Virus record (IMG/VR): IMGVR_UViG_3300031576_000002
Span: 62,001-126,000 of that record
Direction: 5' to 3' (one strand)
Length of the DNA: 64,000 bases
In this document: positions 33,161 through 54,365 of the stretch, in pieces
Position numbering within the stretch: the stretch's first letter is position 1
Layout: each line of letters opens with the position of its first letter
Position numbers and translations under genes: made by a program
Notes under the pieces: generated by a model
Told to the model about the DNA's origin: nothing
Seen by the model: the letters and a program-made list of their open reading frames with translations, nothing else
Database searches by the model: none

Positions 33161-33734
33161 GAAGCCTTCCCCACAAATCGTCAAAGGCATACTGCATTTT
33201 AAGCTCTCGGCCTTTTTGAAGAAAGGGCTGCAAACTTTCCCAGACACTCTCTTTGCTCGCATCTTCTGCCAAAGCCTTGAGCAGTTCCGTAGCGTCTCCG
33301 TAGTCACCCGCTCCACGCCAAGCCCCCAGCTTCAGAGCTAGCAACTGTTCTGTAGAGGGCTGAGAAGCTGTGATCCCTTCTGATTGTACCAGAACAGGAC
33401 CCTCGGATAGAACATCGACATAGCCCTTGGCCGCATCATTGAGCCAGTCACGGGGCCAGTTGTTCTCTGCGGCTACCGCCTCTGCCCATTTCCGCACGAG
33501 CTGTGCATTGGGCGATAGAATGACGACGTCAACATCTTTGGTGGACTCTCGGGTGCGGTAGCCAAGAACCATAGCAGCGCCACCAAGAACGACCAAATGG
33601 ATCTGTTGACCATCGGCATGGGCAAGTTCGCCGAGTCGGGTAAGGCCGGATTGAATATCGGAAAAGTTGAAGGAGGAGTCTGCGGGAGACGCGGAAAGGC
33701 AGAGGCGACGGAGGATAGCTGTGAGGGGGCTCAT
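33147..33734 (-). CDS. DUF6036/AbiEii-like nucleotidyltransferase
   Basis: LVVLGGAAM..RESTKDVD..WLND..LLALKLGA.R..DYGD. Confidence 0.8.
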   Translation of the reverse strand: MSPLTAILRRLCLSASPADSSFNFSDIQSGLTRLGELAHADGQQIHLVVLGGAAMVLGYRTRESTKDVDVVILSPNAQLVRKWAEAVAAENNWPRDWLNDAAKGYVDVLSEGPVLVQSEGITASQPSTEQLLALKLGAWRGAGDYGDATELLKALAEDASKESVWESLQPFLQKGRELKMQYAFDDLWGRLHEPT

Positions 33735-34936
33735 GCTGCGGCCTGGACGAGACGGGGTATGCCGAGGAAGGTGCGGAGGCGCTTGCGGACTAGCTTGCGG
33801 CCTTCCTTGGACTTCAGTTCGCACTCCCACACAATGAGCAATTTCCATCCTGCATCAGCTAGAGCTTCTGCCTTTGCTTTATCACGTAGTACGGCGGCGA
33901 TCTGCGGAACGTACTTAGGAGTGTACGGCTGATGCCATTCATTACCAACAGCGTGTGCATGCCAAAAGCATCCATTGCACTCTATCGCTACTTTAGTTTG
34001 TAAGAGCGCGATGTCGAGGGCTCGCTTCTTACCACGCTGGTAGCGATGGTCAAAAGTGTAATCAGTTTGAAACTCTACCCCCAGTTTGCGCAAAATTCTC
34101 TGGACACGGCGTTCAGGTAGCGAATCCTTGACTGGCTGGCAACGGCGTAACGGAATACCGAACTTCTTCACTCGGTCGGCTATGGTACTCGTGGTGCAAT
34201 GAAAGCATCGAGCAATTTCCGGAATTGTCAGCTTTTGAGCTGTATAGAGCCCTTCTAGCGACTCTTTTGTAATATCGGGCCTTCGCTCACGATCCGGCCA
34301 GTTACCAGCTTCGATTGTTCTTTTAGCCCAAATCTTCGTCGCCGTTACTGTATCGCGCCTTTTTACCCCACTTCTTTCCAGGCGGTCAATAATAGTAGTT
34401 GTATCAACTTTAAGTTCTGCTGCAAGACTCGAAGCGCTCCTGCCGTCCTTGTATTGAACGACTATGTACGCATCATCAAGCTCTTTAGCCGCAAAACTCT
34501 TCCTAACGCTTACCCCTTGTGCAGACATGTAACTGCGTACGGTAAGACCGTCAAGCCCGGTACGGTTAGCTATCTCTCTGATACTATGCCCTGCCTTGTA
34601 GAGAGACACTATTTCAGAAGACTTTTCTGCGTACTTCCTCCATTCGTACTTGTAGACTCCCGCAAGAGTCAAACGATTTATTACGATTTTCTCTGTTGTT
34701 TCTACTTCGCGTGCAATCGCTCGCGGACCTTTTCCCGTCTGGTAGAGCTGTAAGATACGTTCAGCATCGACCTCAACTCTTCCAGGGCACTTTTCGATGA
34801 TAACCCCCGCTTCGCGCAGTCTGGACTTGACGAGCTTTCTGGAAACTCCTAAAGAAGCCGCCAAAGCGCTTAGGCTTTCCCGCGCCTTGTAGCGTGCAAC
34901 TAGCACGGCCGAGTTGAGATGGATTTGGCGTTTCAT
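33731..34936 (-). CDS. Free-standing Vsr/DUF559-type endonuclease with multiple HTH repeats
   Basis: Five LY..G.S..IA repeats; LDIA..VAIECNGCFWHAH..RD..GWKLLIVWECE; TATAAAAT upstream. Confidence 0.85.
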   Translation of the reverse strand: MKRQIHLNSAVLVARYKARESLSALAASLGVSRKLVKSRLREAGVIIEKCPGRVEVDAERILQLYQTGKGPRAIAREVETTEKIVINRLTLAGVYKYEWRKYAEKSSEIVSLYKAGHSIREIANRTGLDGLTVRSYMSAQGVSVRKSFAAKELDDAYIVVQYKDGRSASSLAAELKVDTTTIIDRLERSGVKRRDTVTATKIWAKRTIEAGNWPDRERRPDITKESLEGLYTAQKLTIPEIARCFHCTTSTIADRVKKFGIPLRRCQPVKDSLPERRVQRILRKLGVEFQTDYTFDHRYQRGKKRALDIALLQTKVAIECNGCFWHAHAVGNEWHQPYTPKYVPQIAAVLRDKAKAEALADAGWKLLIVWECELKSKEGRKLVRKRLRTFLGIPRLVQAAA

Positions 34937-34970
34937 GCAGCGGGCAATTTTATAGCAACTGCGTAGAACA

Positions 34971-36812
34971 TCAAGGCGTAAATCCGCTTCCTGCAAGTAC
35001 CCCGCTAGGCCCGCCGACCGACAAGCCGTACCTACTGAAAAACCCCGACGGAACACTACTATTACAGCACATGATCCCGTCCGCTACAAAGTTCTCGAAC
35101 CTGCTCCCAGGCACAGAAATATCGTACATACGTGGGCTCTTCATAGGCTCGATAGATACGATCTTAGCGCGACAGACTTCGGTATCCAAGAGATGCCCTT
35201 GCGCCCTTGGAGGAGCTACGACAATCTCATCTCCCACTTGAAGGTCTCGACCTTTTACCCGTAGAAGGCTGTTCAAGCCGAACCGAAATACCGAGTGGTC
35301 TCCCGTGAGAGAAATCGATGTCCTGCTTGACAGACGCACCCGATAGCAGTCCTTTCCCGCGCAATCATGAGAGAGCCACGCCTGGACTTTTTTCCAGGCA
35401 GGACGCCCCGTCTTTGTATCGACCGCAAGCACTTCGGGAGATTTGACTTCAGCGGCAAAATCGCCAATTGGAACTGTCTGGATCTTTCCGCCGTCCCTCA
35501 CAATCAACTCGTGTTCCGCGCCAACAGAAAAGAAGCGGCCAATCGAGTTGTGAGCCATGACGCCCGAAGCCACGAAGTTCTCTACTCCAGGCACGGACAG
35601 GTCGTACATCTTAGCTACGTGAACAGGTTCTACTGCCTTGACACGGTCAATCCGTGAAGTGCTGGTTTCCAGACGGTGCCGAAGATCGCAAGTGACAATC
35701 TCACTACCTTCTTTCAGGGCTCTTCCTTGTACCGGCTCCAGCCGGTTTCCCTGCACCTCAAACAAGGAGTGATCCCCTGTAATCGTAATGGACTTTCCAC
35801 CGGCTGTCTTGATCTTGTAGCAGTCTTTGGCAGAAGTGTCGTGCTCCCACCACTGGGTAACCGGATGCCATCCTACCTCACCGCTAGCGGGATGGATCGC
35901 CAAGACTTCAGAGCCTTCTCGTGGGTTCGCACAAGCCTCTCCAATCGTAACCGGATAGGTTCGTTTACCCTCCCGTATAAGTAATTCTTCTTCAGTAGAT
36001 ATACTGAAGGAATACTGCATCTGGACTAACACCGATCCTTGACTTCTAAACTGCTGCTTGAACCGGATCAGCCAGTCTTTGAAGTCCGCGAACAGGGGAA
36101 GTCCGCTCACCTGAGCAATCTTGCTCAGGTGGTCAATGGTGAGCGCGTTGCCGCCGAGGCTGTAGACGTAGTCCGTGTCCACGGCGTAGATGCCCTGGCT
36201 CTCCAGGGCTACCAGGGTAGCGGCCTGGATGAGAACCCAGAGATGCTGGTCTGGGAAGTTGCCGACCCCGAACCCGGTATAGGGCGGCACCATGTTGATG
36301 ACGCCCGCTCCGAGGTCGAGGTAGACGGACATCATCGCGTCGGAGTAGCCGTAGGTGACGCCTCCCCGCGACGTAATGTTGGTGGACGTGAGGCTCTTGC
36401 GGCTCTTGTCCACCATCAGCCGCAGGATGGGGATGTACTTGAAGTATTTGATCGGGGCTACGCGGATCAGGTGCTGCTTCCGGATCTCCCTGGCGTTTCC
36501 AGTCCGGAAGCGGTAGAAGGCCAGGTACGTGGGGCTCTGAAGCAATGCTGAGTCAAAACCGTACTTGTACGTGCCCAATCCAAGCCGCTGGACAGCACCA
36601 CTGCCTGCCTCTGGAAACAGCAGCGTCTCGATCGCGGTCCCGCCGTCGTCCACTAGCTCGATCTTTCCCGCTTCGGGGTCGGTCGTGATGAGCTGCTCGG
36701 GAGTCGCGTTCCTGTCGAGTGGCTCGGTCGCCGCAATGAGAATGTCCTCGGCAGTGCCTTGCCTGAGCAGGACAAGCTCTTGATCGCTTCTGAGAGGCTG
36801 TGGCTGGCTCAT
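34971..36812 (-). CDS. Putative head-tail/neck protein interrupted by two mini-inteins
   Basis: Two Hint domains; predicted spliced product of about 304 aa; host-protein function inferred from context only. Confidence 0.6.
   Translation of the reverse strand: MSQPQPLRSDQELVLLRQGTAEDILIAATEPLDRNATPEQLITTDPEAGKIELVDDGGTAIETLLFPEAGSGAVQRLGLGTYKYGFDSALLQSPTYLAFYRFRTGNAREIRKQHLIRVAPIKYFKYIPILRLMVDKSRKSLTSTNITSRGGVTYGYSDAMMSVYLDLGAGVINMVPPYTGFGVGNFPDQHLWVLIQAATLVALESQGIYAVDTDYVYSLGGNALTIDHLSKIAQVSGLPLFADFKDWLIRFKQQFRSQGSVLVQMQYSFSISTEEELLIREGKRTYPVTIGEACANPREGSEVLAIHPASGEVGWHPVTQWWEHDTSAKDCYKIKTAGGKSITITGDHSLFEVQGNRLEPVQGRALKEGSEIVTCDLRHRLETSTSRIDRVKAVEPVHVAKMYDLSVPGVENFVASGVMAHNSIGRFFSVGAEHELIVRDGGKIQTVPIGDFAAEVKSPEVLAVDTKTGRPAWKKVQAWLSHDCAGKDCYRVRLSSRTSISLTGDHSVFRFGLNSLLRVKGRDLQVGDEIVVAPPRAQGHLLDTEVCRAKIVSIEPMKSPRMYDISVPGSRFENFVADGIMCCNSSVPSGFFSRYGLSVGGPSGVLAGSGFTP
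35061..35528 (-). mobile_element. Mini-intein 2 (156 aa, ends CCN)
   Basis: SVGAEHEL..LTGDHSVF..MYDISV..ENFVADGIMCCN|S. Confidence 0.85.
35547..36005 (-). mobile_element. Mini-intein 1 (153 aa)
   Basis: SISTEEEL..ITGDHSLF..MYDLSVPGVENFVASGVMAHN|S. Confidence 0.9.
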
Positions 36813-37834: not shown

Positions 37835-39615
37835 GAAATGAGCTTTTCGTCGCGCTCGCGTACATTATCCTTCACCCACTGAATGTTGGACCTAGACCGT
37901 TCATCCTGATTCTCTGGACGACTTTGCAAGTGCTTGATTCTTGTATCCTTGTCCGCCTGCCGGAAGATCCTGAGCACGCCTTGGAGCGGCAGATCTATCT
38001 GCCTTGGATCGCGCTCTGGCGCAAACAGTGGAAAGCTGGAATAAACAGGAACTTCATAGCCTTCCGCTTTCATCCATTCGATGAAGTTCTTGATCGTCTC
38101 TTCATTCAATTCTGCCGAAATCTTCTCCAGTATCTTCTCTCGGCCTTCTACAAGGCGGTCGATAAACTCACCCTCAGCTTTCATCTCTAGCTCGGAACGA
38201 TACTCGCTTTGGTACCAATCATCTACGTCCAACTCATCCAAAACGGTATAAGCCTCTTCCTGCTCTTCAGGATCATCCGTAGTAATTTCGATAATGCCGC
38301 CCTTGGCAGTGAGATGGGGAACCGAGTCTTCGAGCCACTCTATAAAGGTTCTCTCTACATCGATCTCTTTTATCAGATCGGCCAGGTCAAGACTGTAAGG
38401 ATCTTCGGATAGTTTTTTCCACTCTGCTTCATAATCTTTAAAGTCGATGTAGTCGATAAAGAGTCCGATAGCCAAAGGCGGTATGTTCTCCTCCATCCAG
38501 TGTCCTAGCATCCTGCGTGGGTACTCCTCGTCTACTAAGATTTCCTGCTCTGGCCTGAGCTTTCTATGCTCCTCTTCCCACTTCAGATCCTGCTCGATCC
38601 ACTCCTGCGTCCGCTCTATCGCGGACTCTTTGAGATCATCTATTTCATAGTGGTCGGCGTACTCATGGCGTAAGTTCACACCAAGACTATTGGTCAACTT
38701 TTCGAGCGTGTACGCGCCAATGCCTATGAGAGGTCTTCGGATCTCGTCGATAACTTTTTCGCCTACTTCCCGATCACGAACGTCTTTGTACTGACGAGAT
38801 TCTGGATGTGCCAGCACGTACTTCTCGCCGTTTTTCAGGATGAGGTAGAGCGGACCGTCTTTCAGGTAGTCCTTTGAGAACCGTGGATCCTTCACGCACC
38901 AGTCTGTGCCGTGACAGAGTGCCGCAGAAGACTCAGGCGTCGTAATCTTCAGTACCTGGTACGTGCCGTCGTCATAGACTTGCTGCGCACCTTCTACTTC
39001 CTTGACGCGGACCTTCTCCTTCTTGCTTTCCTGGCCAGTTGCGCTGTCGATCGCATCCGCAAGATCGCCGTAGCTTCTGTACTGGCCGATGTCTTTGGGA
39101 GCCTGGAAGCGTGGACTGTTCTTGAGCCGTTCAAACTTGGAGAGCGCTTCGTGGACTTTCTCGGTATCTTCTGGAAACCGGATCTGCTCCGCCTGCACCT
39201 GACGGACGATCCAGGACAGATACTTCTTGGCAAGCGATGGATCGGCTTCCGCCGCTTCTCGGATCTCGGCTTCACCGAACTGCGGAAATGCTTTGAGCAG
39301 GCCGGGTAGCCTCTCTTCAAGCCCTGCTTGAATGAGACGGGCTAGGACTCTTTTCAGCGCGGCCGGAGCCCAGGCACCTCCCTGCTCCTGACTTCTCGTA
39401 CCTCGTTGAAAGTTTCCGCGCGTATCTATGAAGCCAGTGTCCTGAATGTCGTCCCATGCTAGCGAATTGCTCAACACGATCTCGACGTGAGGCTGGTCAA
39501 ACTCTCCCACGATGACCTCGCCGTCGGTAAGGAGAATCGCCGGGCGGCGCTTTACGAACTCTGCGTGCAGCAATTCATTGGCTAGCAGCAGGGTAGTCGC
39601 AGTCAAGGGGCTCAC
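37753..39615 (-). CDS. Multidomain protein with repeated leader motifs
   Basis: GTGA-coupled start MSPLT; ADPS..KYLSW, KDIGQY, GTDWCV domain; acidic C-terminal half. Confidence 0.6.
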   Translation of the reverse strand: MSPLTATTLLLANELLHAEFVKRRPAILLTDGEVIVGEFDQPHVEIVLSNSLAWDDIQDTGFIDTRGNFQRGTRSQEQGGAWAPAALKRVLARLIQAGLEERLPGLLKAFPQFGEAEIREAAEADPSLAKKYLSWIVRQVQAEQIRFPEDTEKVHEALSKFERLKNSPRFQAPKDIGQYRSYGDLADAIDSATGQESKKEKVRVKEVEGAQQVYDDGTYQVLKITTPESSAALCHGTDWCVKDPRFSKDYLKDGPLYLILKNGEKYVLAHPESRQYKDVRDREVGEKVIDEIRRPLIGIGAYTLEKLTNSLGVNLRHEYADHYEIDDLKESAIERTQEWIEQDLKWEEEHRKLRPEQEILVDEEYPRRMLGHWMEENIPPLAIGLFIDYIDFKDYEAEWKKLSEDPYSLDLADLIKEIDVERTFIEWLEDSVPHLTAKGGIIEITTDDPEEQEEAYTVLDELDVDDWYQSEYRSELEMKAEGEFIDRLVEGREKILEKISAELNEETIKNFIEWMKAEGYEVPVYSSFPLFAPERDPRQIDLPLQGVLRIFRQADKDTRIKHLQSRPENQDERSRSNIQWVKDNVRERDEKLISWVFGNYNGKGCGPRSTTTSRSEIFLL

Positions 39616-40088
39616 GAATTCCCCCGCCGTGCGCGTTCGGTTTGAAGCATTTCGTAGACCGCGTTGCTCGTCAGGTTCTGGTAAGTACCGGCCGCATCTC
39701 GCCACCATCGAGCTTCGGCCTGGTTTGGGCCTCGGGAGCGTACATCAAGGTGTAGCCCGGAATTTGCCCAAAGAGGGTAGAGACCTATTCCGCCCCAGCC
39801 GAATCTTTCCGCCTGAATCCAGGAATCAATGAGACTGAGACCTTGAACGTGGCAATCCACGGCTTCCCCGCGGTAATGAGCGGAGTCCGCAGCATGCCCG
39901 TCGGCTGCCCACGCGGCATGGATGAGAACAGGCTTGCCGACAAAAGCTCGGAAGATGTCGAGACGGAAAAGGAGTTCTTGCTCGATTTGATTGGGGTCTC
40001 CCCACGCATTGACGCCTGGACGCCCAAAGGCTTGCTCTTCTCTTTTGAAGAACTTGAGCGTCTTCCAGAACGCTGCATCAGCTTTCAT
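39612..40088 (-). CDS. Peptidase M15 endolysin
   Basis: SAHYRGEAVD..GGIGLY..LHLDVR Zn-peptidase motif. Confidence 0.85.
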   Translation of the reverse strand: MKADAAFWKTLKFFKREEQAFGRPGVNAWGDPNQIEQELLFRLDIFRAFVGKPVLIHAAWAADGHAADSAHYRGEAVDCHVQGLSLIDSWIQAERFGWGGIGLYPLWANSGLHLDVRSRGPNQAEARWWRDAAGTYQNLTSNAVYEMLQTERARRGNS

Positions 40089-40094
40089 TTTCGG

Positions 40095-40412
40095 CTAGTC
40101 CCGCCGAGGATGGGGGCGCTGCCCTAGCTGGAGCTTTCTTCCAATCTGGCGAGCTACTTCCTCCCAGGAAAAGCCTGCGGAGTCTCCAGTCTCGACAATA
40201 CTGCGAACTCGTGAATCTTGTCCGAACCTGCGCTCTAGCTCCTGCCCAAGGTTAACCCAATCAGGTTCCGGGTCTCCCCACTCACCAATCGCTTTTGTTA
40301 CAAGATCCCCGACCGGCCAGAAATCCTGATTGTACTGAAATAGTTTCACGACTGCATCGACCGTACTGTTGCTGTCCGCCAAGAGGTGTAGTGCGTTTCT
40401 TAGGTGTTTCAT
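40095..40412 (-). CDS. Hypothetical protein with amphipathic leader
   Basis: MKHLRNALHLLA. Confidence 0.5.
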   Translation of the reverse strand: MKHLRNALHLLADSNSTVDAVVKLFQYNQDFWPVGDLVTKAIGEWGDPEPDWVNLGQELERRFGQDSRVRSIVETGDSAGFSWEEVARQIGRKLQLGQRPHPRRD

Positions 40413-40422
40413 CAGAGTCCCT

Positions 40423-40908
40423 CTACTCCGGCAAGATACCGATTCCACGTCGAACGGTTTGCACCACCGACTTCTCAGGATCTACGTCAAACGCCTTGAA
40501 CAGAATATCTGTGGCTTTCTCGACATCGAACTCCTTACAGGAAAAGAAATCGGCTGATAGATAAGAACGCTGCGGCCAGGTATGAACGGAGAGATGAGAT
40601 TCCGCGATTATGACAATTCCGGAAACTCCCGACTCCCCCCACGCACGTTCTTCGAGATGCCGTTCCATATCTCGAACTACAGTTTCTGCGTGAGACGGTA
40701 ACGGAGCAACTCCACCACGGAGCTGCTCTACAAAACGCTGAAGCTCGCTCGCTGCATGCGGGAAACGTACGCAAAGCGGTGGCACTACGACACACATATC
40801 TAGGTGCGCCGGCATCTCTGCAAGTACGTGATAAACGGTCTCTAAACTCGCTAGAGCCCCGGGGCTCCTAACCCGGCAATCAAAAAGTAGGTGCAACCCA
40901 GTCTGCAT
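40423..40908 (-). CDS. speD: S-adenosylmethionine decarboxylase proenzyme
   Basis: [31 protein letters not shown]; GGAGG SD before the ATG at 40908. Confidence 0.9.
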
Positions 40909-40910
40909 GG

Positions 40911-41516
40911 CTACGCTGCCTCCAGTTTTTCCAGTAACAGCGCTTCTACTTGGTGAGGGCACATGCCGGGATTTTCTAAGTTGAAGGCTTTTCCCGCATT
41001 ACAGTTGTAGCACAAAGTTTGGTACTTAGTCGGATCATTCTCTACTATCATACGCTGCCACATTTTCCGCAAGCCGCAGAGCTTCCGGTCTCTATTTCCG
41101 CCGCCTTTAATACGGTCAATTACTAAAAACTGTAAGCGAGCTTCTCCGCAGCAAGTACACGCATAGCCGTAAAGGTCAAAAAGCCTAAAGCGTAGGCGCA
41201 TCCTCGAATTGTAAAACTTCCTTCTTATCTTGTCTGGATGCTTTTTCTGATAGCGTCGCTCTCGCTCTTTACGTCTTGGATCAACTTTGTGAGATTTATA
41301 GTAGTCGGCATTCCGCTGCTTTATGTATTCTCGCCTCTTTGCGTTCCGCAAACGGTCGGCCTCCCTCAAAGATTCTATATGCTCAAGTCGCCACTTTCTG
41401 TTTTTAGCCAGTAATGTAGCCTTATTTTTCTGGTAGAAGGCTCGCTTCTTCTCCAAAATTTCTTGCCGGTTAGTCTGATAATACTCCTGCCTTTTCTTTA
41501 GTTCTAGGCTAGACAC
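40911..41516 (-). CDS. HNH endonuclease paralog with catalytic His-to-Arg change
   Basis: [26 protein letters not shown]. Confidence 0.8.
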
Positions 41517-41519
41517 AAT

Positions 41520-42140
41520 TTAGGCCGCCTTGTCCAACTCCATAGTCCGCCTTTCTACCTCGTGCGGACAAATACCAGGATACTCAAAATTATTCACTTT
41601 TCCAGCGTTACAGTTCCAGCACAGTGTCTGGTACTTGGCCGGATCTTTCTCAACAATCATACGTTTCCACATGCTCCGGCTGTTTCCGGAATTTTTCAAA
41701 TCTCGGTTTCCTCCGCCATTTATATGGTCTATCGCGAGAAATGGAAGACGGTGTTCACCGCAACAGGCACAGCATAGACCGTAAATTGTTAAAACTCTGT
41801 AGCGAACTGCGGCCCACTGCTTGCGACCTCTCGCATTCAACTCTTCCCGTCTACGTTTATAGGCTTGGTGTAGCCGCTCTTTATACTGTGGATCATTTTT
41901 ATGAGCCTGGCGCCACGCTGTACTCTGCGCATTATGCTTTTCTTTATTAGCTTTGTAGTAAGCGCGCTGGTACGCGCGCGAGCGCTCACTGTTAGCAGCC
42001 CGCCACTTTCTATTACGCGCTACAACTTTTTCCTTATTCAAGGCGTAGCGCGCCCGGATCTTATCAATGTTCTTCCAGTAATACCTCCGACCTCTCGCCC
42101 GCTCTTTTACTAAGTCAACTTCCTTGCGATCAACAGCCAT
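41520..42140 (-). CDS. HNH endonuclease (intact)
   Basis: CACCGE..FLAIDHINGGG..YQTLCWNCN. Confidence 0.85.
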   Translation of the reverse strand: MAVDRKEVDLVKERARGRRYYWKNIDKIRARYALNKEKVVARNRKWRAANSERSRAYQRAYYKANKEKHNAQSTAWRQAHKNDPQYKERLHQAYKRRREELNARGRKQWAAVRYRVLTIYGLCCACCGEHRLPFLAIDHINGGGNRDLKNSGNSRSMWKRMIVEKDPAKYQTLCWNCNAGKVNNFEYPGICPHEVERRTMELDKAA

Positions 42141-42155
42141 AGCCGTAACCCACCG

Positions 42156-42296
42156 TTACCACTCCTGCCTGACCATCGCTGTCATGCTGATTTCTGCGGG
42201 CAAGTTTTCGAGCAGGTGGTAGACGGTCGGGAGGCTAGCTATCGCTCCTGCCGTGCGTGTACGGCAGTCGAAGAGGAGATGGATTCCTGTTTCCAA
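42156..42296 (-). pseudogene. Truncated duplicate of the speD N-terminus
   Basis: LETGIHLLFDCRTRTAGAIASLPTVYHLLENLPAEISMTAMVRQEW*; 24 of 42 residues identical to speD. Confidence 0.85.
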
Positions 42297-42311
42297 TTCA
42301 CAAAACCTTCC

Positions 42312-42680
42312 TTACGGAGCAGTAGAAGCGTCCGTGATTCTCAGCCGCAGCAAGTCGAGCAGCTTCAGCCCGTCCTCGTGCGGAAGCGCTTCGTAGACCT
42401 CGATCGCTAGAACTGGCCCCGCCTCGAACAAGGCGTTGACAACATCTTCGAGGTTTCCGTTAATCCAGGTCTCGGCCAACTCTTGTGCCTCGTTGAGACC
42501 CTCCTCACCACCTAGCCCTTTCGTAGAATCTTCCATGGACTCTTCCATGGACTCTTCCATGGACTCTTCCGTGGACTCTTCCATGGACTCTTCCATGGAC
42601 TCTTCCGTGGACTCTTCCATGGACTCTTCCACGTCGTCTTCCGCGCCGATAGCGCGGATGATTCTACTGAGGCGCTGCAT
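42312..42680 (-). CDS. Acidic protein with (M/T)EES repeats and amphipathic leader
   Basis: MQRLSRIIRAIGA; GGAG SD. Confidence 0.6.
   Translation of the reverse strand: MQRLSRIIRAIGAEDDVEESMEESTEESMEESMEESTEESMEESMEESMEDSTKGLGGEEGLNEAQELAETWINGNLEDVVNALFEAGPVLAIEVYEALPHEDGLKLLDLLRLRITDASTAP
42526..42633. repeat. 12-bp tandem repeat, about 9 copies (GGACTCTTCCAT)
   Basis: Directly visible in the sequence. Confidence 0.9.
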
Positions 42681-42695
42681 GGGAGGCTCCTTGCG

Positions 42696-43202
42696 CTACG
42701 GCAGCGCGTTGGTAATCGTGGTCAGAAGGTCCAGCGTGCTGTCGCGGAACTCGACGTAGGGCGCTGGACGGGCGGCAGCCACGGGCTCGTTGCGAGTACG
42801 GGGCTGACTCACCTTCTTCTGCTCGATCGCGGTACGAACTGTGTCCACGTCCGCAATCACAGCTCCATTACCCTGCGCAGCAGCGATGTCCGTGAGAAGA
42901 CCGAGGATTTCGTCGCGAAAAGAGCGCCGATTGATCGGAGCCTCGAACTCAACGCCGCGTACGAACACGTCCGAAACCTTGTTGACGCGATAGCCAGCGA
43001 TACGCGCCAGGAGCGCGGTCACAGTTGCAGAAGGCGCCAGAAGGTCGAGAACCGCCTCGCCTACGTCCAGGGTGGTATCCCGGAAGTTACGAAAGGCGTA
43101 CACTCCGACCTGCTCAGAGCCGGTCACGAATGCGCCCGAAACCAAGCGGTTCTCGATGTTGTCCAGCTCTGCCAGGATCTCTGCCTTTGTGCTTAGGGCC
43201 AT
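42696..43202 (-). CDS. Putative virion protein (paralog of 44786-45331)
   Basis: MALSTKAEIL; FV(T/R)G motifs; GGAGG SD. Confidence 0.55.
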   Translation of the reverse strand: MALSTKAEILAELDNIENRLVSGAFVTGSEQVGVYAFRNFRDTTLDVGEAVLDLLAPSATVTALLARIAGYRVNKVSDVFVRGVEFEAPINRRSFRDEILGLLTDIAAAQGNGAVIADVDTVRTAIEQKKVSQPRTRNEPVAAARPAPYVEFRDSTLDLLTTITNALP

Positions 43203-47009: not shown

Positions 47010-47834
47010 TTAGTTCACCTTCACGACCGTAAGGGTTCGTTGGTGCGTTGTGCCGGTACCACCCGATACTCTCCACCGGATCTCAATTGCTTGACCCCCC
47101 GTTACACCCGTTACGTAGGCGTGGGTTGCGACTGGATACGGATTGTTGGCCTGTCCTTTGGACGGTCGCTCCGTATGGGCCACCTGGACGCCCCCCACGT
47201 AAATCGAAATCGTGGTGCTCTGGGCACCCGAAGTATTCTCCAGCGTAGTGGTGAACCAGATAAGGTAGCCGCCCGCCCCCGGCGTAAGGGTCATGCCAGA
47301 CAAGAGCCCGTCAGTGGGGGATATTGTGGTGGTGTCGCCCGTGGCCGAAACTTGCGCCGGGGTCCCGATGGTGCCGGCAAGACCGCTAACCGATTTGATC
47401 TTGGCCTGGTTGCTAGCATCAATCTCCAGCGTCACGTTATCGGTCTTGACCGCGAGGAACCCGGCATCTGCTGCCGCAGCTCCAGTACCATCCGAGTTCC
47501 TATCCTTGACGATCCCACCGTACTGTTGCGCGAGTGCCGCGACCGCGACATCCGACGAGATAGTGCCGCCAGACTTCCCAATCCCGTCGCCCGCCGACAG
47601 GTACGTGAGGCCATCAACGTAACTTTTGGAGGTTGCGGCAGGAGCACTGGACGGGGTGGTCGGCACCACGACATCGCCTGATCCGTCCCGCTGCACGATG
47701 TTGCCCGCGGTTGCGGCGGTGCCGAACGCCTTCTCCGCCAAGGCACTCGACTCTGTACCCAGCAACGTCCCGTTGGTACCGGGCGCGTGGTTCTCCGCGT
47801 TACTGATCGCGTGCTGTTTCTTGTGGATCGCCAT
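47010..47834 (-). CDS. Fibre/whisker-like protein
   Basis: AATSKSYVD, AGDGI, BclA-C-like C-terminal domain. Confidence 0.55.
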   Translation of the reverse strand: MAIHKKQHAISNAENHAPGTNGTLLGTESSALAEKAFGTAATAGNIVQRDGSGDVVVPTTPSSAPAATSKSYVDGLTYLSAGDGIGKSGGTISSDVAVAALAQQYGGIVKDRNSDGTGAAAADAGFLAVKTDNVTLEIDASNQAKIKSVSGLAGTIGTPAQVSATGDTTTISPTDGLLSGMTLTPGAGGYLIWFTTTLENTSGAQSTTISIYVGGVQVAHTERPSKGQANNPYPVATHAYVTGVTGGQAIEIRWRVSGGTGTTHQRTLTVVKVN

Positions 47835-47836
47835 TT

Positions 47837-49045
47837 TCAGCTATCCATCTCGACCAACGCGAAGTCGTCGATTGTGCCGGCCGCAACACTGCGGCGGAAC
47901 GCCAAGTACGTGGAATCGGTCGCGCCCTTCTTGAAGAAAGCCCATTGGTTCACAGCCGTCAGTTGGTCCAGCTCTCCCGTGAAGACGGGATCTGCCCCTG
48001 CGTAGCTGAAGGCCCCCTGGAACAGCACAGCGTTCGACCCCGCCTTGAGCCGAAGCTGATTTGAAGGATCGACCTCCAGGGTTGTGTTGTCGGTCTTGAC
48101 CGCAAGAAATCCTGCATCGGCCGCTGCCACGCCTGTACCGGCAGAATTCCGATCCTTGACAACGCCACCGTACTGCTGCGCAAGAATGGCGGTCGCGACG
48201 TCAGCAGCCAGGGGAGTACCAGAGCCTCCCCCGAGTCCATCGCCGGCTGCTCCTGCGGCAATCCGGACCTGATTGGACCCGTCAATCTCTAGTGTTAAAA
48301 AATCGGTCTTGGCCGCAGCGTACCCCAGGTCTGCTCCCGCGATCCCAGATCCATCGGCAGTGCGACGAACATCAAGACCGCCGTACTGTTGTGGCGCCGC
48401 CGCTACCGCAGGGGCTACCCGTAGGACGTTGACGGCTTTGTCGAGACCGTCACCTGCTTCAAGCTGCGCCGCAGTAAAAGGACTCCACGGCAAAGGATCG
48501 GTATCAACAATATCGGTGCCGAAGGGTGCAGTACATACCCACGAGGTATTGATATTGACTGTACCTTCCAACACCGAGATGATAAACACGCCGCTGGCCG
48601 AATTCCCCGTCACCAAATCGGAGGAACGGACAGGAGCGCCCGCGAGCTGGACGTCGTATACCCCATTCTGGGTCGCGGACACTTGGTTCTTGATTAGGAT
48701 GCGGTCCCCCGTCACGAGCAATACGCCGTCAATCGTGTCGCCATTCTCAAAATCGGTCGCGAGGGTACCGGCCACCACGGTGGCGGCCCGGGCAGCTTCG
48801 TGGGGTTGCAGCCCTGAAGCCGCGGCATCAACGTACGCCTTGGACGCCGCATCATTCGATTCGAAGGGAACCAGCGGAACATTGATCTGATCGCCGTCTC
48901 GTTGAACCAGAGCATCCGACGTCACCATAGGGCTAAACACAATCTCGGCGAGCAATCCTCCACTATCCGTCCCGATAACCGTCTCGGCGGTCCCGGGGTC
49001 GTGGTCTCCGGTGGAGGCCAGCTCGTGGTTTTGCCGGTGGCTCAT
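47837..49045 (-). CDS. Fibre/head-decoration-like protein
   Basis: AASKAYVD..TIDGVLLVTGDRILIKNQ..NGVY domain; AGDGL repeats; ATGA-coupled start. Confidence 0.65.
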   Translation of the reverse strand: MSHRQNHELASTGDHDPGTAETVIGTDSGGLLAEIVFSPMVTSDALVQRDGDQINVPLVPFESNDAASKAYVDAAASGLQPHEAARAATVVAGTLATDFENGDTIDGVLLVTGDRILIKNQVSATQNGVYDVQLAGAPVRSSDLVTGNSASGVFIISVLEGTVNINTSWVCTAPFGTDIVDTDPLPWSPFTAAQLEAGDGLDKAVNVLRVAPAVAAAPQQYGGLDVRRTADGSGIAGADLGYAAAKTDFLTLEIDGSNQVRIAAGAAGDGLGGGSGTPLAADVATAILAQQYGGVVKDRNSAGTGVAAADAGFLAVKTDNTTLEVDPSNQLRLKAGSNAVLFQGAFSYAGADPVFTGELDQLTAVNQWAFFKKGATDSTYLAFRRSVAAGTIDDFALVEMDS

Positions 49046-49713
49046 GGGGGCGTCGTCAGTTCCACGGCATACAGCGTACCGCTCACGTTCAAGACCTGGA
49101 ACGAGGTCAAGTTGACGGTGTCGAACCAAAAGCCCCATGTACTCGTGGGGATCTGGACTGTCGCGGGGGCCGCGGGCTGAGAGAAAATCCCGCGGTACGC
49201 ATGGGCCACGCTGGCGGCAACGTGTGCATCGAGCGTTGCGCCATCGACCGAAACATCGCGCCCGTCGAAAGTTCCGGGAGTCGTGAAGTTTCCGAGATCG
49301 TCAAGAATCGCGAGACTGTTCTGGATGATTTTTCCAGTAATTCCGTCAAACCGAGTAACGGCGTTGTCGGTCGAAACCGCAGGGCCGTCAACATCGCCCA
49401 GTGCCCCCGCATTGATATTTGAAAATGCTTCTTCGGCATCACTCGGATTCCCGATATTGGGGTAGCTGCCTTCTACGATTACGTTCGAGGCTGTAATCTG
49501 CCCAGAAGAGATAAGAGTTAGGGCTTCAATCACATCCCGGATTTCAACGCCCCGTGCTCGCGGCTCCTTAGCAATTCCCTCTTCCCGTAAAAGCTTGTCA
49601 AGAAGATAAGGATTAGGAGCACCCGGTTGCTCACGACCTCGAACAAATACGCCCGTGCCGTAACCACCGACAATTCGCCGAAAGAAATCTGATACGACAG
49701 AAATAGCTGCCAT
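49042..49713 (-). CDS. Fibre-like virion protein
   Basis: GDVDGP..STDNAV.RFDG.TGKIIQNS and DGRDVSVDG motifs. Confidence 0.6.
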   Translation of the reverse strand: MAAISVVSDFFRRIVGGYGTGVFVRGREQPGAPNPYLLDKLLREEGIAKEPRARGVEIRDVIEALTLISSGQITASNVIVEGSYPNIGNPSDAEEAFSNINAGALGDVDGPAVSTDNAVTRFDGITGKIIQNSLAILDDLGNFTTPGTFDGRDVSVDGATLDAHVAASVAHAYRGIFSQPAAPATVQIPTSTWGFWFDTVNLTSFQVLNVSGTLYAVELTTPP

Positions 49714-53115: not shown

Positions 53116-54297
53116 TTAGGTCGTCTTGAGACCCTTCGACACGCCGGCCTTGGTAATGATGAGTTCGTCGATCAGCTCCCACCAGAACCAGCCCCGCACC
53201 GGCTTGCCGGCCTGGAACTGATTCGTCGGCTCGCTGAACAACTCGACCCACACCGGGAAGCCGCCGAGGTACTCAGGAGCGGTCACGCAGAAGATTTCAC
53301 CAGGACGGATGACCTCGAAGTCGTTCGGACGGCGACCGGCCGAAACGATCACGGGGACGCTGAGGATCATCCCGATGAAGCCTGCCATGACCAGCTCGCG
53401 CTGCGTCACGTTGTCCACTTCCTGGCTCATCACCGTCACGAAGTCGGAAATCTCGCGGCGGTTGACCAGAAACTTGTCGGCCACGAGCCGATTCTTCTCC
53501 ACCTGGTAGCGAATCGCTTCCATGGTGGCGAGGTTGGCGGTGGCAAAGAACACGAGGTCGTTCACCGCAGTTGCTGCGGCGTCGAGCCGGCTACGCAGGA
53601 TGCTGTCCTCCTGCTTCTCGATCGCCTGCCGAGCACGATCCTGGATGCGGCTCAGGATGTCGTAGCCCGCCTGGTACACGTCAGCCAGGTTGATGGTCGG
53701 GTACGCGGACACCACACGCGGGACCGGGAACACGTACCGGCCACCCAGACGGGTTTCCGGGGTCTGTGCGTCCACGCCCACATCGAACGCCGTCGCGAAA
53801 ACGTCCTTGTCGTACCGGACGGTTTCGCCCTGCCTCACCAATCTCACGGGCAGGATCCGACGGCTGAACCCGTCGTAGTCGAGCGTCTCCTTGACGGGAT
53901 TGACGAGCTGCTGGCCAAGAATTTCGAACGCCTCTCCGCGGGGATTCGCCAGCGCCTCGCGGATCATTCCTTCCTCTTCCGCAGCCGTGACGTTGATGCC
54001 TGCGCTTGCGGTGCGATCCCAGGTCGGGACAGCATCGACCTCGCCCTCCGCCATGCTGTCGATCACATGCTTGATCTGGAACAGGACGTCGCGCTGGTCG
54101 TAGGCGTTGATCTCACCCTGACGGTCGAAGACCATCTCCCGCGAACGCTGCTTGGTACCAGCGCGGGTCAGACCGCCGAAAGCGGGAAGGTTGGCGGGCT
54201 CGCCAGTGCGGCGATCCCGGTAGGTCAGACCGGCAGGCGCGAGCGGCTTCTTGCCCCCCGTGGCTGCGGCGCCCAGTTGAAGATACGGGTTAGACAT
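53116..54297 (-). CDS. Major capsid protein (HK97-like)
   Basis: About 393 aa; AAGGAG SD; NPVKETLDYDGFSRRIL..YDKD..ARQAIEKQED motifs; strong codon bias; follows protease, scaffold and decoration genes. Confidence 0.85.
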   Translation of the reverse strand: MSNPYLQLGAAATGGKKPLAPAGLTYRDRRTGEPANLPAFGGLTRAGTKQRSREMVFDRQGEINAYDQRDVLFQIKHVIDSMAEGEVDAVPTWDRTASAGINVTAAEEEGMIREALANPRGEAFEILGQQLVNPVKETLDYDGFSRRILPVRLVRQGETVRYDKDVFATAFDVGVDAQTPETRLGGRYVFPVPRVVSAYPTINLADVYQAGYDILSRIQDRARQAIEKQEDSILRSRLDAAATAVNDLVFFATANLATMEAIRYQVEKNRLVADKFLVNRREISDFVTVMSQEVDNVTQRELVMAGFIGMILSVPVIVSAGRRPNDFEVIRPGEIFCVTAPEYLGGFPVWVELFSEPTNQFQAGKPVRGWFWWELIDELIITKAGVSKGLKTT

Positions 54298-54365
54298 TTT
54301 CATCTCCTTTTGGAAGGGGCGGAGGAATTTCCTCCTCCACTCCGGATTTCAGTTCGTCTTTGTCA

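What the first reader, a model, noticed from the sequence alone, without database searches (positions are those of the whole stretch)
40423..42296. HNH cassette sits between a truncated speD 5' end and a complete, diverged speD
Seen: the apparent intergenic DNA at 42156-42296 encodes LETGIHLLFDCRTRTAGAIASLPTVYHLLENLPAEISMTAMV, 24/42 identical to the intact speD start [42 protein letters not shown], with both HNH genes in between. Inference: the endonuclease cassette inserted inside speD while supplying a recoded replacement 5' end, which restores the gene without splicing and may make it resistant to cleavage.
Basis: partly seen in the sequence, partly recalled or inferred. Interest (0 to 1): 0.7.

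Follow-up and report, generated by a model that had tools for sequence, protein, structure and literature searches.

The report
Endonuclease cassette that replaces speD's start
In an uncultured 205-kb cave phage, two HNH endonuclease genes sit inside a speD-type decarboxylase gene, and the gene stays whole because the insert brings its own diverged copy of the first 42 codons; this way of invading a gene is known from fungal mitochondria, and I found no phage report of it.

Summary
On the minus strand the order is: a 46-codon speD 5' fragment (42296-42156), HNH1 (42140-41520), HNH2 (41516-40911), then a complete 161-codon speD (40908-40423). Fragment and speD start match 25/42 aa counting the fragment's TTG start as Met (24/42 read literally), E=3e-18, but only 55% at DNA level.

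One related phage contig (L010) has the same flanking genes and an uninterrupted speD with no HNH genes. Its first 42 codons resemble the displaced fragment (72% nt; 4/38 aa differences over residues 2-39) more than the start of the intact gene (61% nt; 12/38). From codon 43 on, it matches the intact gene at the normal distance for these two phages.

So the intact speD is a chimera. A roughly 1.39-kb element (HNH1, HNH2 and a foreign 5' module) lies at about codons 39-43, in a predicted loop next to the family's conserved MT..PP motif. No intron or intein is present.

HNH1 keeps the HNH catalytic motif. HNH2 has lost the catalytic His. Cleavage, its site and self-immunity are all untested, and only one filled and one close empty allele exist.

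This mirrors the fungal mitochondrial "mobile ORF plus replacement C-terminus" hybrids. I rate it a new variant of a known kind.

The parts
42171..42296 (-). Displaced native 5' end of speD (codons 1-42). The start codon is now TTG, and a GGAAGG Shine-Dalgarno-like motif lies 9 nt upstream.
   Evidence: Compared with the empty allele L010 it is 72% nt identical and differs at 4/38 aa (residues 2-39). Compared with the intact gene's start in the same genome it is only 55% nt identical. It has no frameshift or internal stop.
42141..42170 (-). Left junction and spacer. Four non-homologous codons (RQEW) and a TAA close the fragment ORF, followed by 15 nt before the HNH1 ATG.
   Evidence: Homology to the empty allele and to the intact gene ends within codons 39-42. 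The stop-to-start distance suggests translational coupling, which is an inference.
41520..42140 (-). HNH1, 206 aa. A putative active free-standing HNH homing endonuclease with an N-terminal helical repeat region and a C-terminal HNH domain.
   Evidence: PHROG HNH families, best E=1.3e-9. Family alignment A3 keeps CxxC...DH...N...CxxCN. AF2 model has pLDDT 92. Foldseek top hits are HNH nucleases but weak, best E=0.067. Relatives are annotated HNH endonuclease in isolated phages. There is no Pfam hit.
40911..41516 (-). HNH2, 201 aa. A paralogue of HNH1 (45% identical) that has lost the catalytic His (DR where the family has DH).
   Evidence: His is present in 12 of 13 aligned family members and only HNH2 has Arg. 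A predicted HNH1-HNH2 interface through the HNH domains scores 0.69 against a best control of 0.00.
40783..40908 (-). Replacement (foreign or long-branch) 5' module of speD, codons 1-42, with its own ATG. A GGAGG motif lies inside the HNH2 3' end, 10 nt upstream.
   Evidence: Compared with the empty allele it is 61% nt identical and differs at 12/38 aa. That is about three times the divergence of the displaced fragment, although the 5' and 3' regions evolve at equal rates against outgroups.
40423..40782 (-). speD codons 43-161 plus stop. This is the resident-like 3' part, with the Glu103/Ser104 self-processing site, His109 and Cys124.
   Evidence: It differs from the empty allele at 22/119 aa, or 8/90 outside the variable helical insert. 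Pfam AdoMet_dc scores 71.2 bits against a cut-off of 25. PDB 1tlu matches at E=6.7e-10.
42312..42680 (-). Upstream flanking gene, a 122-aa acidic protein with 12-nt tandem repeats. Used as a synteny anchor.
   Evidence: Its homologue (100 aa, 50% identical over 54 aa) lies directly upstream of speD in L010. The repeats are shown.
42696..43202 (-). Second upstream flanking gene (168 aa). Used as a synteny anchor.
   Evidence: Its 3' end is 80% nt and 82% aa identical to L010 1-214. A 30%-identical homologue lies directly upstream of speD in the more distant L045.
40095..40412 (-). Downstream flanking gene (105 aa).
   Evidence: ORF. In L010 an ORF opening MRHL begins 15 nt after the speD stop, at the same relative place as this gene, which opens MKHL. 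Only 12 codons can be seen in L010.

Best explanation
A free-standing HNH homing-endonuclease cassette has invaded the coding sequence of the phage's speD-type pyruvoyl decarboxylase gene at about codons 39-43. The gene stays functional because the cassette carries a replacement 5' module.

**The inserted unit** is about 1388 bp (42170..40783). It consists of a 30-nt spacer, HNH1, HNH2, and a diverged copy of speD codons 1-42 with its own start codon.

**The result:**
- The native 5' end is pushed upstream as a 46-codon stub.
- The new 5' module is fused in frame to the resident 3' part, giving a chimeric but complete speD.
- No intron, intein or split-protein reassembly is needed.

**Most likely origin (inferred).** During a co-infection the endonuclease cut an HNH-less speD near codon 42. 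The downstream end of the break invaded a donor genome in which the HNH genes lie just upstream of speD. It copied the donor 5' end and both HNH genes. The new strand was then joined to the unresected upstream end without homology.

**Consequence (inferred).** Once formed, the stub and the 3' part serve as homology arms, so the unit can home as a block into any L010-like allele. The diverged sequence across the former target would protect the carrier genome.

**Shown versus inferred.** The anatomy, the empty allele, the chimeric divergence pattern, the HNH motif state and the absence of an intron are shown. Cleavage, the site of the cut, self-immunity, the repair pathway and translational coupling are inferred.
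For: 1. **Anatomy and tight co-oriented packing.** The fragment stop is 15 nt from the HNH1 ATG, the HNH1 stop is 3 nt from the HNH2 GTG, and the HNH2 stop is 2 nt from the speD ATG.
2. **Empty allele L010.** It has the same upstream genes and an intact speD with no HNH genes.
3. **The fragment is the orthologue of the empty allele's start.** Nucleotide identity is 91/126 between the empty allele (E) and the fragment (F), 77/126 between E and the intact gene (I), and 69/126 between F and I. F-I is lower than F-E at p=0.006. Sites where F=E but not I number 28, against 11 where I=E but not F (p=0.009). Of the 13 amino-acid sites in residues 1-42 where E and I differ, the fragment has E's residue at 11.
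4. **Region-specific rate is excluded.** Against the outgroup P0020, the 5' and 3' parts differ equally (0.53 and 0.54). E-I is 0.32 in the 5' part against 0.18 in the 3' part (0.09 outside the variable insert). E-F is 0.11.
5. **In-situ duplication is excluded.** Only 5-7 nt sites and 1 aa site are shared by F and I against E.
6. **The breakpoint is structurally sensible.** It falls in the predicted loop 36-44, between the beta1/alpha1 unit and beta2, next to the subfamily's conserved MT..PP motif.
7. **HNH1 has the full HNH motif and HNH2 lacks the His**. HNH assignment also rests on PHROG hits, the fold search and annotated relatives.
8. **No RNA family matches at gathering score**, so there is no sign of an intron.
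9. **The assembly is reproduced** by a second assembler at even depth.
10. **The fragment shows little decay.** It has no stops and mostly conservative changes, with dN 0.12. This fits an insertion that is recent relative to the split from the L010 lineage.
Against: - There is only one filled allele and one close empty allele. No donor lineage was found that has HNH genes upstream of a speD with the I-type start.
- The compared region is only 42 codons, so some tests are weak: the aa sign test over residues 2-39 gives p=0.057, and E-I in the 5' part against the whole 3' part gives p=0.11.
- Synonymous sites are saturated, so the downstream end of the foreign tract cannot be placed.
- The I-type start has slightly more unique changes than a clock predicts (5 against 1, not significant). 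Accelerated evolution after insertion cannot be separated from a more distant donor.
- No Pfam HNH model matches either protein, and the structural matches are weak.
- Nothing shows that HNH1 is active or that it targets speD.
Confidence: 0.68

Rival explanations
1. Whole-gene import. HNH1, HNH2 and a complete foreign speD arrived together and replaced everything downstream of codon 42 of the resident gene. The present speD would then be entirely donor-derived, not a chimera made in this genome.
For: The downstream end of the foreign tract cannot be located, because synonymous sites are saturated. Synonymous divergence of the speD 3' part from L010 (pS 0.68) is higher than in the flanking 168-aa gene (pS 0.45).
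Against: The intact gene is uneven against the same reference. It differs from L010 at 0.32 in residues 2-39 but at 0.18 (or 0.09) afterwards, while both regions evolve equally fast against outgroups. It is therefore a chimera somewhere in its history. The I-to-outgroup distance equals the E-to-outgroup distance in the 3' part only.
Confidence: 0.15
2. In-situ tandem duplication of speD. The upstream copy was then truncated, and HNH genes later landed between the copies. The endonucleases would have no causal role.
For: The end product, a truncated copy followed by a full copy, is what a decayed tandem duplication can look like.
Against: The two copies in one genome are more different from each other (55% nt, dN 0.37) than the fragment is from another phage's gene (72% nt, dN 0.12). 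They share almost no derived states: 5-7 nt sites and 1 aa site. The syntenic relatives L010 and L045 have a single speD.
Confidence: 0.05
3. Accelerated evolution. The 5' module of the intact gene is not foreign. After a rearrangement it evolved quickly, for example under selection to escape cleavage, while the stub stayed close to the ancestor.
For: With P0020 as outgroup, the I-type start has 5 unique residues against 1 for the empty allele.
Against: That excess is not significant (p=0.22). The changes are mostly conservative and synonymous sites are fully saturated (pS 0.89-0.96). This fits long separate evolution under purifying selection, not a recent burst. This rival also still needs a duplication event that left no shared derived sites.
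Confidence: 0.08
4. Metagenome assembly chimera joining two co-existing strains, one with an F-type speD and one with HNH genes plus an I-type speD.
For: The source is a cave metagenome assembled from short reads, and both assemblies derive from the same reads.
Against: A second assembler gives one 72.7-kb contig across both junctions, with 0 differences and flat depth near 22x. No contig carries a full-length F-type speD even at 80% likeness. The junction has no shared sequence that could mislead a de Bruijn graph.
Confidence: 0.03

Closest known systems
Fungal mitochondrial mobile-ORF (mORF) gene hybrids: Allomyces macrogynus atp6; Glomus sp. atp6, atp9, cox2 and nad3 (PMC3630166, which cites Paquin et al. 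1994 for Allomyces)
   Same: - An endonuclease ORF sits inside a protein-coding gene together with a foreign copy of the gene's terminus.
- The native terminus is displaced as an unexpressed duplicate.
- The native copy resembles the relative's gene, and the inserted copy is much more diverged (64-81% nt in Glomus; 55-61% here).
- No splicing is involved.
   Different: This case is the mirror image. The 5' end is replaced and the native stub lies upstream, whereas in fungi the 3' end is replaced and the stub lies downstream. The endonucleases here are HNH, and there are two of them, rather than LAGLIDADG or GIY-YIG. The host is a bacteriophage. The replacement end needs and has its own start codon and ribosome-binding site. 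Mobility has been shown biochemically for Allomyces and not here.
Intronless homing by free-standing endonucleases of T4-like phages: SegF, SegG, MobE (PMC2988022, PMC2790892)
   Same: - The endonuclease gene is free-standing, next to a conserved gene, and present or absent among relatives.
- Flanking donor sequence is co-converted, producing a chimeric neighbouring gene.
- The carrier is presumed immune through target polymorphism.
   Different: In the T4 cases the endonuclease gene lies between genes, and repair replaces the recipient sequence, leaving no duplicate. Here the insertion point is inside the ORF and the native 5' end is retained as a stub.
Genes split by homing-endonuclease insertion: Aeh1 nrdA/mobE, T4 gene 39/60 mobA, phage 25 gene 43 (PMC2988022)
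   Same: A free-standing endonuclease gene is inserted within the coding region of a phage gene, without an intron or intein, and the function is retained.
   Different: In those cases the two halves are both expressed and reassemble as a two-chain enzyme. Here one complete chain is restored by a duplicated and replaced end, and the 46-codon stub is probably useless.
ShiLan-type hidden out-of-frame HNH insertion in actinophage methylase genes (PMC11855218)
   Same: An HNH homing element inside a phage ORF with no splicing element. It is another unorthodox way of tolerating an endonuclease gene in coding sequence.
   Different: That insert is read through in frame as an extra protein loop, with the HNH gene in another frame. 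Here the host ORF is interrupted and restarted.

Membership tests
HNH (beta-beta-alpha-Me) nucleases | Catalytic His of the D-H dipeptide on the first beta strand | tested here: met
   HNH1 has D138-H139. Asp is invariant and His is present in 12 of 13 aligned family members. HNH2 has Arg at this position, so for HNH2 the feature is NOT met.
HNH (beta-beta-alpha-Me) nucleases | Two CxxC pairs (zinc site) and the conserved Asn residues | tested here: met
   C124, C126/C127, C174, C177 and N178 are invariant, and N176 is nearly invariant, in alignment A3. All are present in both HNH1 and HNH2.
HNH (beta-beta-alpha-Me) nucleases | Match to a curated HNH profile or fold | tested here: inconclusive
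   There is no Pfam HNH hit at E<=0.01. PHROG HNH families match at 1.3e-9 for HNH1 and 8.3e-4 for HNH2. Foldseek top hits are almost all HNH nucleases, but the best E is 0.067. tblastn relatives are annotated HNH endonuclease.
Free-standing homing endonuclease genes (intronless homing) | Presence or absence at the same locus in related genomes | tested here: met
   L010 has the same flanking genes and lacks the cassette. The more distant L045 also has the 168-aa-gene homologue directly upstream of speD, with no HNH gene. There is only one close relative.
Free-standing homing endonuclease genes (intronless homing) | Flanking sequence of donor origin (a co-conversion tract) beside the endonuclease gene | tested here: met
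   Codons 1-42 of the intact speD are two to three times more diverged from L010 than the displaced fragment or the 3' part. The downstream limit of the tract could not be placed.
Free-standing homing endonuclease genes (intronless homing) | Site-specific cleavage of the endonuclease-less allele, with resistance of the carrier allele | not testable with these tools
   This needs in-vitro cleavage or co-infection assays.
Free-standing homing endonuclease genes (intronless homing) | Not embedded in an intron or intein | tested here: met
   No Rfam family reaches its gathering score in 40000-43000; the only hit is a chance glmS match at E=0.18 in the repeat gene. The HNH ORFs are separate and are not fused in frame with speD.
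mORF-type gene hybrid (Allomyces atp6 type) | Duplicated gene terminus flanking an endonuclease ORF, with the native copy closer to the relative's gene than the inserted copy | tested here: met
   It is met in mirror image: the 5' end here, not the 3' end.
mORF-type gene hybrid (Allomyces atp6 type) | The hybrid is expressed and the native terminus is silent; the endonuclease drives mobility | not testable with these tools
   No RNA run holds this sequence. Only the intact ORF and the ribosome-binding-site-like motifs can be read.
Class 1 pyruvoyl AdoMetDC/SpeD family (PF02675) | Profile match above the curated cut-off, and the Glu-Ser self-processing site with downstream His and Cys | tested here: met
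   Pfam scores 71.2 bits against a cut-off of 25. The T. maritima enzyme 1tlu aligns across ESHLxxHTWP...C. S104, H109 and C124 are invariant and E103 nearly invariant in alignment A4. The AF2 model has pLDDT 87.
Class 1 pyruvoyl AdoMetDC/SpeD family (PF02675) | S-adenosylmethionine as substrate | not testable with these tools
   Many phage SpeD homologues are ornithine or arginine decarboxylases instead (PMC9992855, PMC10407285). This subfamily also carries a helical insert of about 35-40 aa.
Group I/II intron or intein carrying an endonuclease | A splicing RNA structure, or in-frame intein splicing blocks | tested here: not met
   No intron family is found. Stop codons separate all four ORFs. 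A complete 5' end follows the cassette, so no splicing is required.

The most novel reading that the evidence does not exclude
Phages possess a general but overlooked 'end-replacement' class of homing element. In it, an endonuclease gene (here perhaps an active/inactive HNH heterodimer pair) travels with a diverged, self-starting copy of the target gene's first structural module. Such an element can home into the middle of coding sequences with no intron, intein or gene splitting. Each homing event leaves a 5' stub, which then serves as the upstream homology arm and possibly as a translational leader for the endonuclease.
Probability: 0.3. Interest if true: 0.7.

Novelty: new variant of a known kind. 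Interest (0 to 1): 0.55.

Why it matters
**A fourth arrangement in phages.** Phage homing endonuclease genes are known to live in coding sequence through introns, inteins, gene splitting, or read-through loops. This locus shows another arrangement in a phage, gene-end replacement, which has so far been described for fungal mitochondria. My literature searches found no phage report; they covered only the open-access library.

**Practical consequences:**
- Short 'orphan' ORFs beside endonuclease genes may be displaced gene ends, not new genes.
- Auxiliary metabolic genes next to endonuclease genes may be chimeras, which matters for phylogenies of such genes.
- The stub marks the likely cleavage site to within a few codons. 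That makes the endonuclease's target directly testable.

**Further use.** If the cassette homes as a unit, it is a natural example of an endonuclease delivered with a cleavage-resistant rescue copy of its target. It would also be a compact model for how selfish elements drive modular exchange within protein genes.

Tried and rejected
**Searches for more alleles**
- IMG/VR scans with speD, the 168-aa flanking gene and the lysin found no close relatives.
- INPHARED blastn of 7 kb found nothing.
- A JGI metagenome scan with a speD alignment gave 33 loci, all at most 36% identical over the full length. None had an HNH gene or a speD stub beside speD.
- A word-index search with the 168-aa gene found only itself.
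- A word-index search with HNH1 found only relatives at 38% identity or less, on short contigs.

**Population variants.** Laying the source runs on the locus showed no cassette-less variant and no joints. Logan contigs cannot show rare variants.

**Alternatives tested and rejected**
- Intron: Rfam was negative.
- Pfam HNH assignment: negative.
- Own promoter or terminator signals for the cassette: no more than expected by chance.
- GC3 and codon usage as a marker of the foreign tract: not discriminating, because speD has low GC3 in both phages.
- Relative-rate test for accelerated evolution of the new 5' end: not significant.
- A speD link for the HNH family in Synechococcus phage S-SRM01: none.

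**Not attempted**
- Extending L010 from its run.
- DNA-binding prediction for HNH1 on the empty-allele site.
Full report
**Where the window comes from.** The window is bases 62001-126000 of a 205,227-bp virus record assembled from a cave metagenome. Its first and last 227 bases are 226/227 identical, so the genome is probably complete and circularly assembled. The finding lies in a late-gene region: a major head protein at 53116-54303, a head-decoration-like protein at 47837-49138 and an M15 endolysin-like gene at 39612-40088. All genes around the finding are on the minus strand.

**Check of the observation.** Read 5' to 3' on the minus strand, the order is as follows:
- a 168-aa gene (43202..42696);
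- an acidic 122-aa repeat protein (42680..42312);
- a 46-codon ORF (42296..42156, TTG start);
- HNH1 (42140..41520, 206 aa);
- HNH2 (41516..40911, 201 aa);
- speD (ATG 40908..40423, 161 aa);
- a 105-aa gene (40412..40095).

The short ORF aligns without gaps to speD residues 1-42. The match is 25/42 identical counting the TTG start as Met (24/42 read literally), E=3e-18, but only 69/126 at the nucleotide level. After codon 42 the ORF runs into four unrelated codons and a stop. The genome holds no other speD-like sequence, and a six-frame all-against-all comparison found no other short gene stub of this kind. A second assembler reproduces both junctions in one 72.7-kb contig at even depth, with no alternative contig.

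**What the genes are: speD.** It passes Pfam AdoMet_dc at 71.2 bits against a cut-off of 25. It aligns to the Thermotoga enzyme across the Glu-Ser self-processing site and the downstream His and Cys. The Pfam match covers only residues 91-155, because this subfamily has an extra helical hairpin at about residues 52-91. The AF2 model (pLDDT 87) gives beta1 at 2-13, helices at 16-35, a loop at 36-44, beta2 at 45-49, the inserted hairpin, and then the conserved core. The substrate is unknown, because many phage SpeD homologues decarboxylate ornithine or arginine (PMC9992855, PMC10407285).

**What the genes are: the HNH pair.** HNH1 and HNH2 are 45% identical paralogues. They have no Pfam hit but match PHROG HNH families and phage genes annotated as HNH endonuclease. 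In a 13-member family alignment the two CxxC pairs, the Asp and the Asn are invariant. The catalytic His is present in every member except HNH2, which has Arg. The HNH1 model (pLDDT 92) has a long helical N-terminal region and a C-terminal domain whose best structural matches are HNH nucleases, though only weakly, with best E=0.067. A third paralogue lies elsewhere in the genome.

**The empty allele.** The word-index protein search found one close speD relative, P0002 (78% identical, 161 aa), on a 1098-bp Logan contig, L010. L010 is syntenic. It starts with the 3' end of the 168-aa gene (80% nt, 82% aa identity), continues with a 100-aa homologue of the acidic protein, and then runs directly into an uninterrupted speD. 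An ORF with a similar start to the window's 105-aa gene follows. There are no HNH genes. A more distant relative, P0020 (47% identical, on L045-L049), also has the 168-aa-gene homologue directly upstream of an uninterrupted speD.

**Which 5' end is native.** Call the empty allele E, the fragment F and the intact gene I.
- *Nucleotides, codons 1-42:* E-F is 91/126 identical, E-I 77/126 and F-I 69/126.
- *Two copies in one genome:* F and I are less alike than F is to another phage's gene (p=0.006).
- *Site patterns:* 28 sites have F=E but not I, 11 have I=E but not F, and only 5 have F=I but not E (nt 4-117, sign test p=0.009).
- *Amino acids, residues 2-39:* differences are 4/38 for E-F, 12/38 for E-I and 15/38 for F-I.
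- *Codons 43-161:* E-I is 22/119, or 8/90 outside the variable hairpin.

The N-terminal region is not simply faster-evolving. Against the outgroup P0020, the two regions differ equally (0.53 and 0.54). So F is the orthologue of E's start. The 3' part of I lies at the orthologous distance. The first 42 codons of I have a separate and longer history. An in-situ duplication is excluded by the near absence of derived states shared by F and I.

Synonymous sites are saturated (pS 0.68-0.96), so the signal is mainly non-synonymous: dN is 0.12 for E-F, 0.29 for E-I in the 5' part, and 0.14 for E-I in the 3' part. F has no stop or frameshift and its changes are mostly conservative. This fits an insertion that is recent relative to the split from the L010 lineage.

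**Where the breakpoint lies.** Homology of F to E and I ends within codons 39-42. This is the predicted loop between the beta1/alpha1 unit and beta2. It lies next to the best-conserved N-terminal motif of the subfamily, M-T-x-x-x-P-P. Homing endonucleases typically recognise conserved coding sequence (established knowledge; PMC2988022). Across this site the intact gene differs from the empty allele at many positions. That is the basis for supposing self-immunity, but it is only an inference.

**Mechanism proposed.** The inserted unit runs from 42170 to 40783 (1388 bp) and comprises a spacer, HNH1, HNH2 and the replacement codons 1-42.

I propose that a cut in an HNH-less speD near codon 42 was repaired from a donor in which the HNH genes sit just upstream of speD. 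The downstream end used speD homology and copied leftwards through the donor 5' end and the HNH genes. The upstream end was joined without homology, which kept the native 5' end as a stub.

The product can then home as a block, with the stub and the 3' part as homology arms. The four ORFs are packed with gaps of 15, 3 and 2 nt. The stub keeps a Shine-Dalgarno-like GGAAGG, and a GGAGG lies inside the end of HNH2, upstream of the speD ATG. This fits one operon with coupled translation, which is an inference. The pattern scan gave no more promoter- or terminator-like sites than chance.

HNH2, which lacks the catalytic His, may be a decaying second invader or a non-catalytic partner. A complex prediction supports an HNH1-HNH2 interface through the HNH domains. 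The score was 0.69 against a best control of 0.00. That mark was reached by 51 of 78 solved complexes and 2 of 108 mismatched pairs. The runs agreed in at least 88% of contacts and the partner's pLDDT was at least 75. As the tool warns, a pass cannot tell which family member binds, so this may only reflect homodimerisation of the family.

**Rivals.**
- *Whole-gene import:* cannot be fully excluded, because the downstream limit of the foreign tract is invisible. The intact gene is uneven against the same reference, however, so it is a chimera somewhere in its history.
- *In-situ duplication:* rejected.
- *Accelerated evolution of the new 5' end:* not excluded, but the relative-rate excess is not significant (5 against 1) and the saturated synonymous sites point to long separate evolution.
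- *Assembly chimera:* unlikely.
- *Intron or intein:* rejected.

**Comparison with what is known.** The closest analogues are the fungal mitochondrial mORF hybrids. In those, an endonuclease ORF travels with a foreign C-terminus and the native C-terminus is left downstream. The native copy is close to the relative's gene and the inserted copy is 64-81% identical (PMC3630166). The present case is the mirror image (5' end, stub upstream), in a phage, with HNH enzymes.

Within phages, it shares presence/absence polymorphism and co-converted flanks with intronless homing. It differs in being inside the ORF and in leaving a duplicate (PMC2988022, PMC2790892). Known phage insertions into ORFs split the gene into two working chains (Aeh1 nrdA, T4 39/60), or are read through as a loop (ShiLan, PMC11855218).

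The T4 mobile-element review does not contain the word stem 'duplicat' at all. My other searches found no phage report of end replacement. That is absence within an open-access library, not proof of absence.

**Verdict.** Nuclease activity, cut site and immunity remain untested, and the sample is one filled allele against one close and one distant empty allele. I file it as a new variant of a known kind, of moderate to good interest.

Noticed in passing
G000:C1:2750-3931 (-), 146705-147886 (-), 159854-161257 (+); all outside the window: Three copies of a roughly 394-aa TnpB-like protein (Pfam OrfB_IS605 plus Cas12f1-like TNB) share about 89% aa identity in this phage genome. This suggests an IS200/IS605-type element that is active, or was recently, in a 205-kb phage.
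   Followed up: partly
G000:C1:145789-146277 (-), locus L009: A third paralogue of the HNH family (about 31-33% identical to HNH1) lies about 400 bp from one of the TnpB copies. No duplicated gene stub was seen beside it.
   Followed up: partly
window 33731-35056 (-): A 441-aa protein matches several PHROG HNH and homing-endonuclease families and DNA-binding families (best 3.6e-19). It overlaps the ends of both neighbouring ORFs and is probably another homing endonuclease gene of a different family.
   Followed up: no
G000:C1:1-227 and 205001-205227: The two ends of the record repeat each other (226/227 identical). The genome is therefore probably complete and circularly permuted or circularly assembled, although it is listed as linear and 85% complete.
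   Followed up: partly
window 42506-42661 (-), inside gene 42312-42680: There are about nine tandem 12-nt units encoding (M/T)EES repeats in the acidic protein upstream of the stub. The L010 homologue lacks the array, and the Logan assembly breaks here.
   Followed up: partly
window 40636-40755 (-), speD residues about 52-91; also P0002, P0020, P0021, P0022, P0026: A subfamily of phage and metagenomic SpeD homologues carries a helical hairpin of about 35-40 residues between beta2 and the strand leading to the processing site. This insert is why Pfam matches only the C-terminal half. Its function is unknown.
   Followed up: partly
window 41781-42140 (-), HNH1 residues 1-120; also HNH2 and P0018: The N-terminal regions of this HNH family consist of repeated helical motifs of about 16-17 residues, of the type (Y/W)(Y/R)xxN(K/P)EK. 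They are modelled as long helices and may be a modular DNA-recognition array.
   Followed up: no
window 42161-42170 and 41482-41491 (-): The first 10 nt after the stub's breakpoint (AGGCAGGAGT, coding RQE) recur exactly in HNH2 codons 8-11 (RQEY). This may be chance (roughly 5% by my estimate) or a trace of how the left junction formed.
   Followed up: partly
window 47269-47619 and 48060-48269: The adjacent structural genes 47010-47834 and 47837-49138 (the latter head-decoration-like) share a repeated segment of about 140 nt (76% over 46 aa in one frame). This suggests a duplicated domain.
   Followed up: no
window 40911-42140 (-): HNH1 and the His-less HNH2 are predicted to pair through their HNH domains (score 0.69 against best control 0.00). 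This hints at an active/inactive heterodimer, or simply at a dimeric family.
   Followed up: partly
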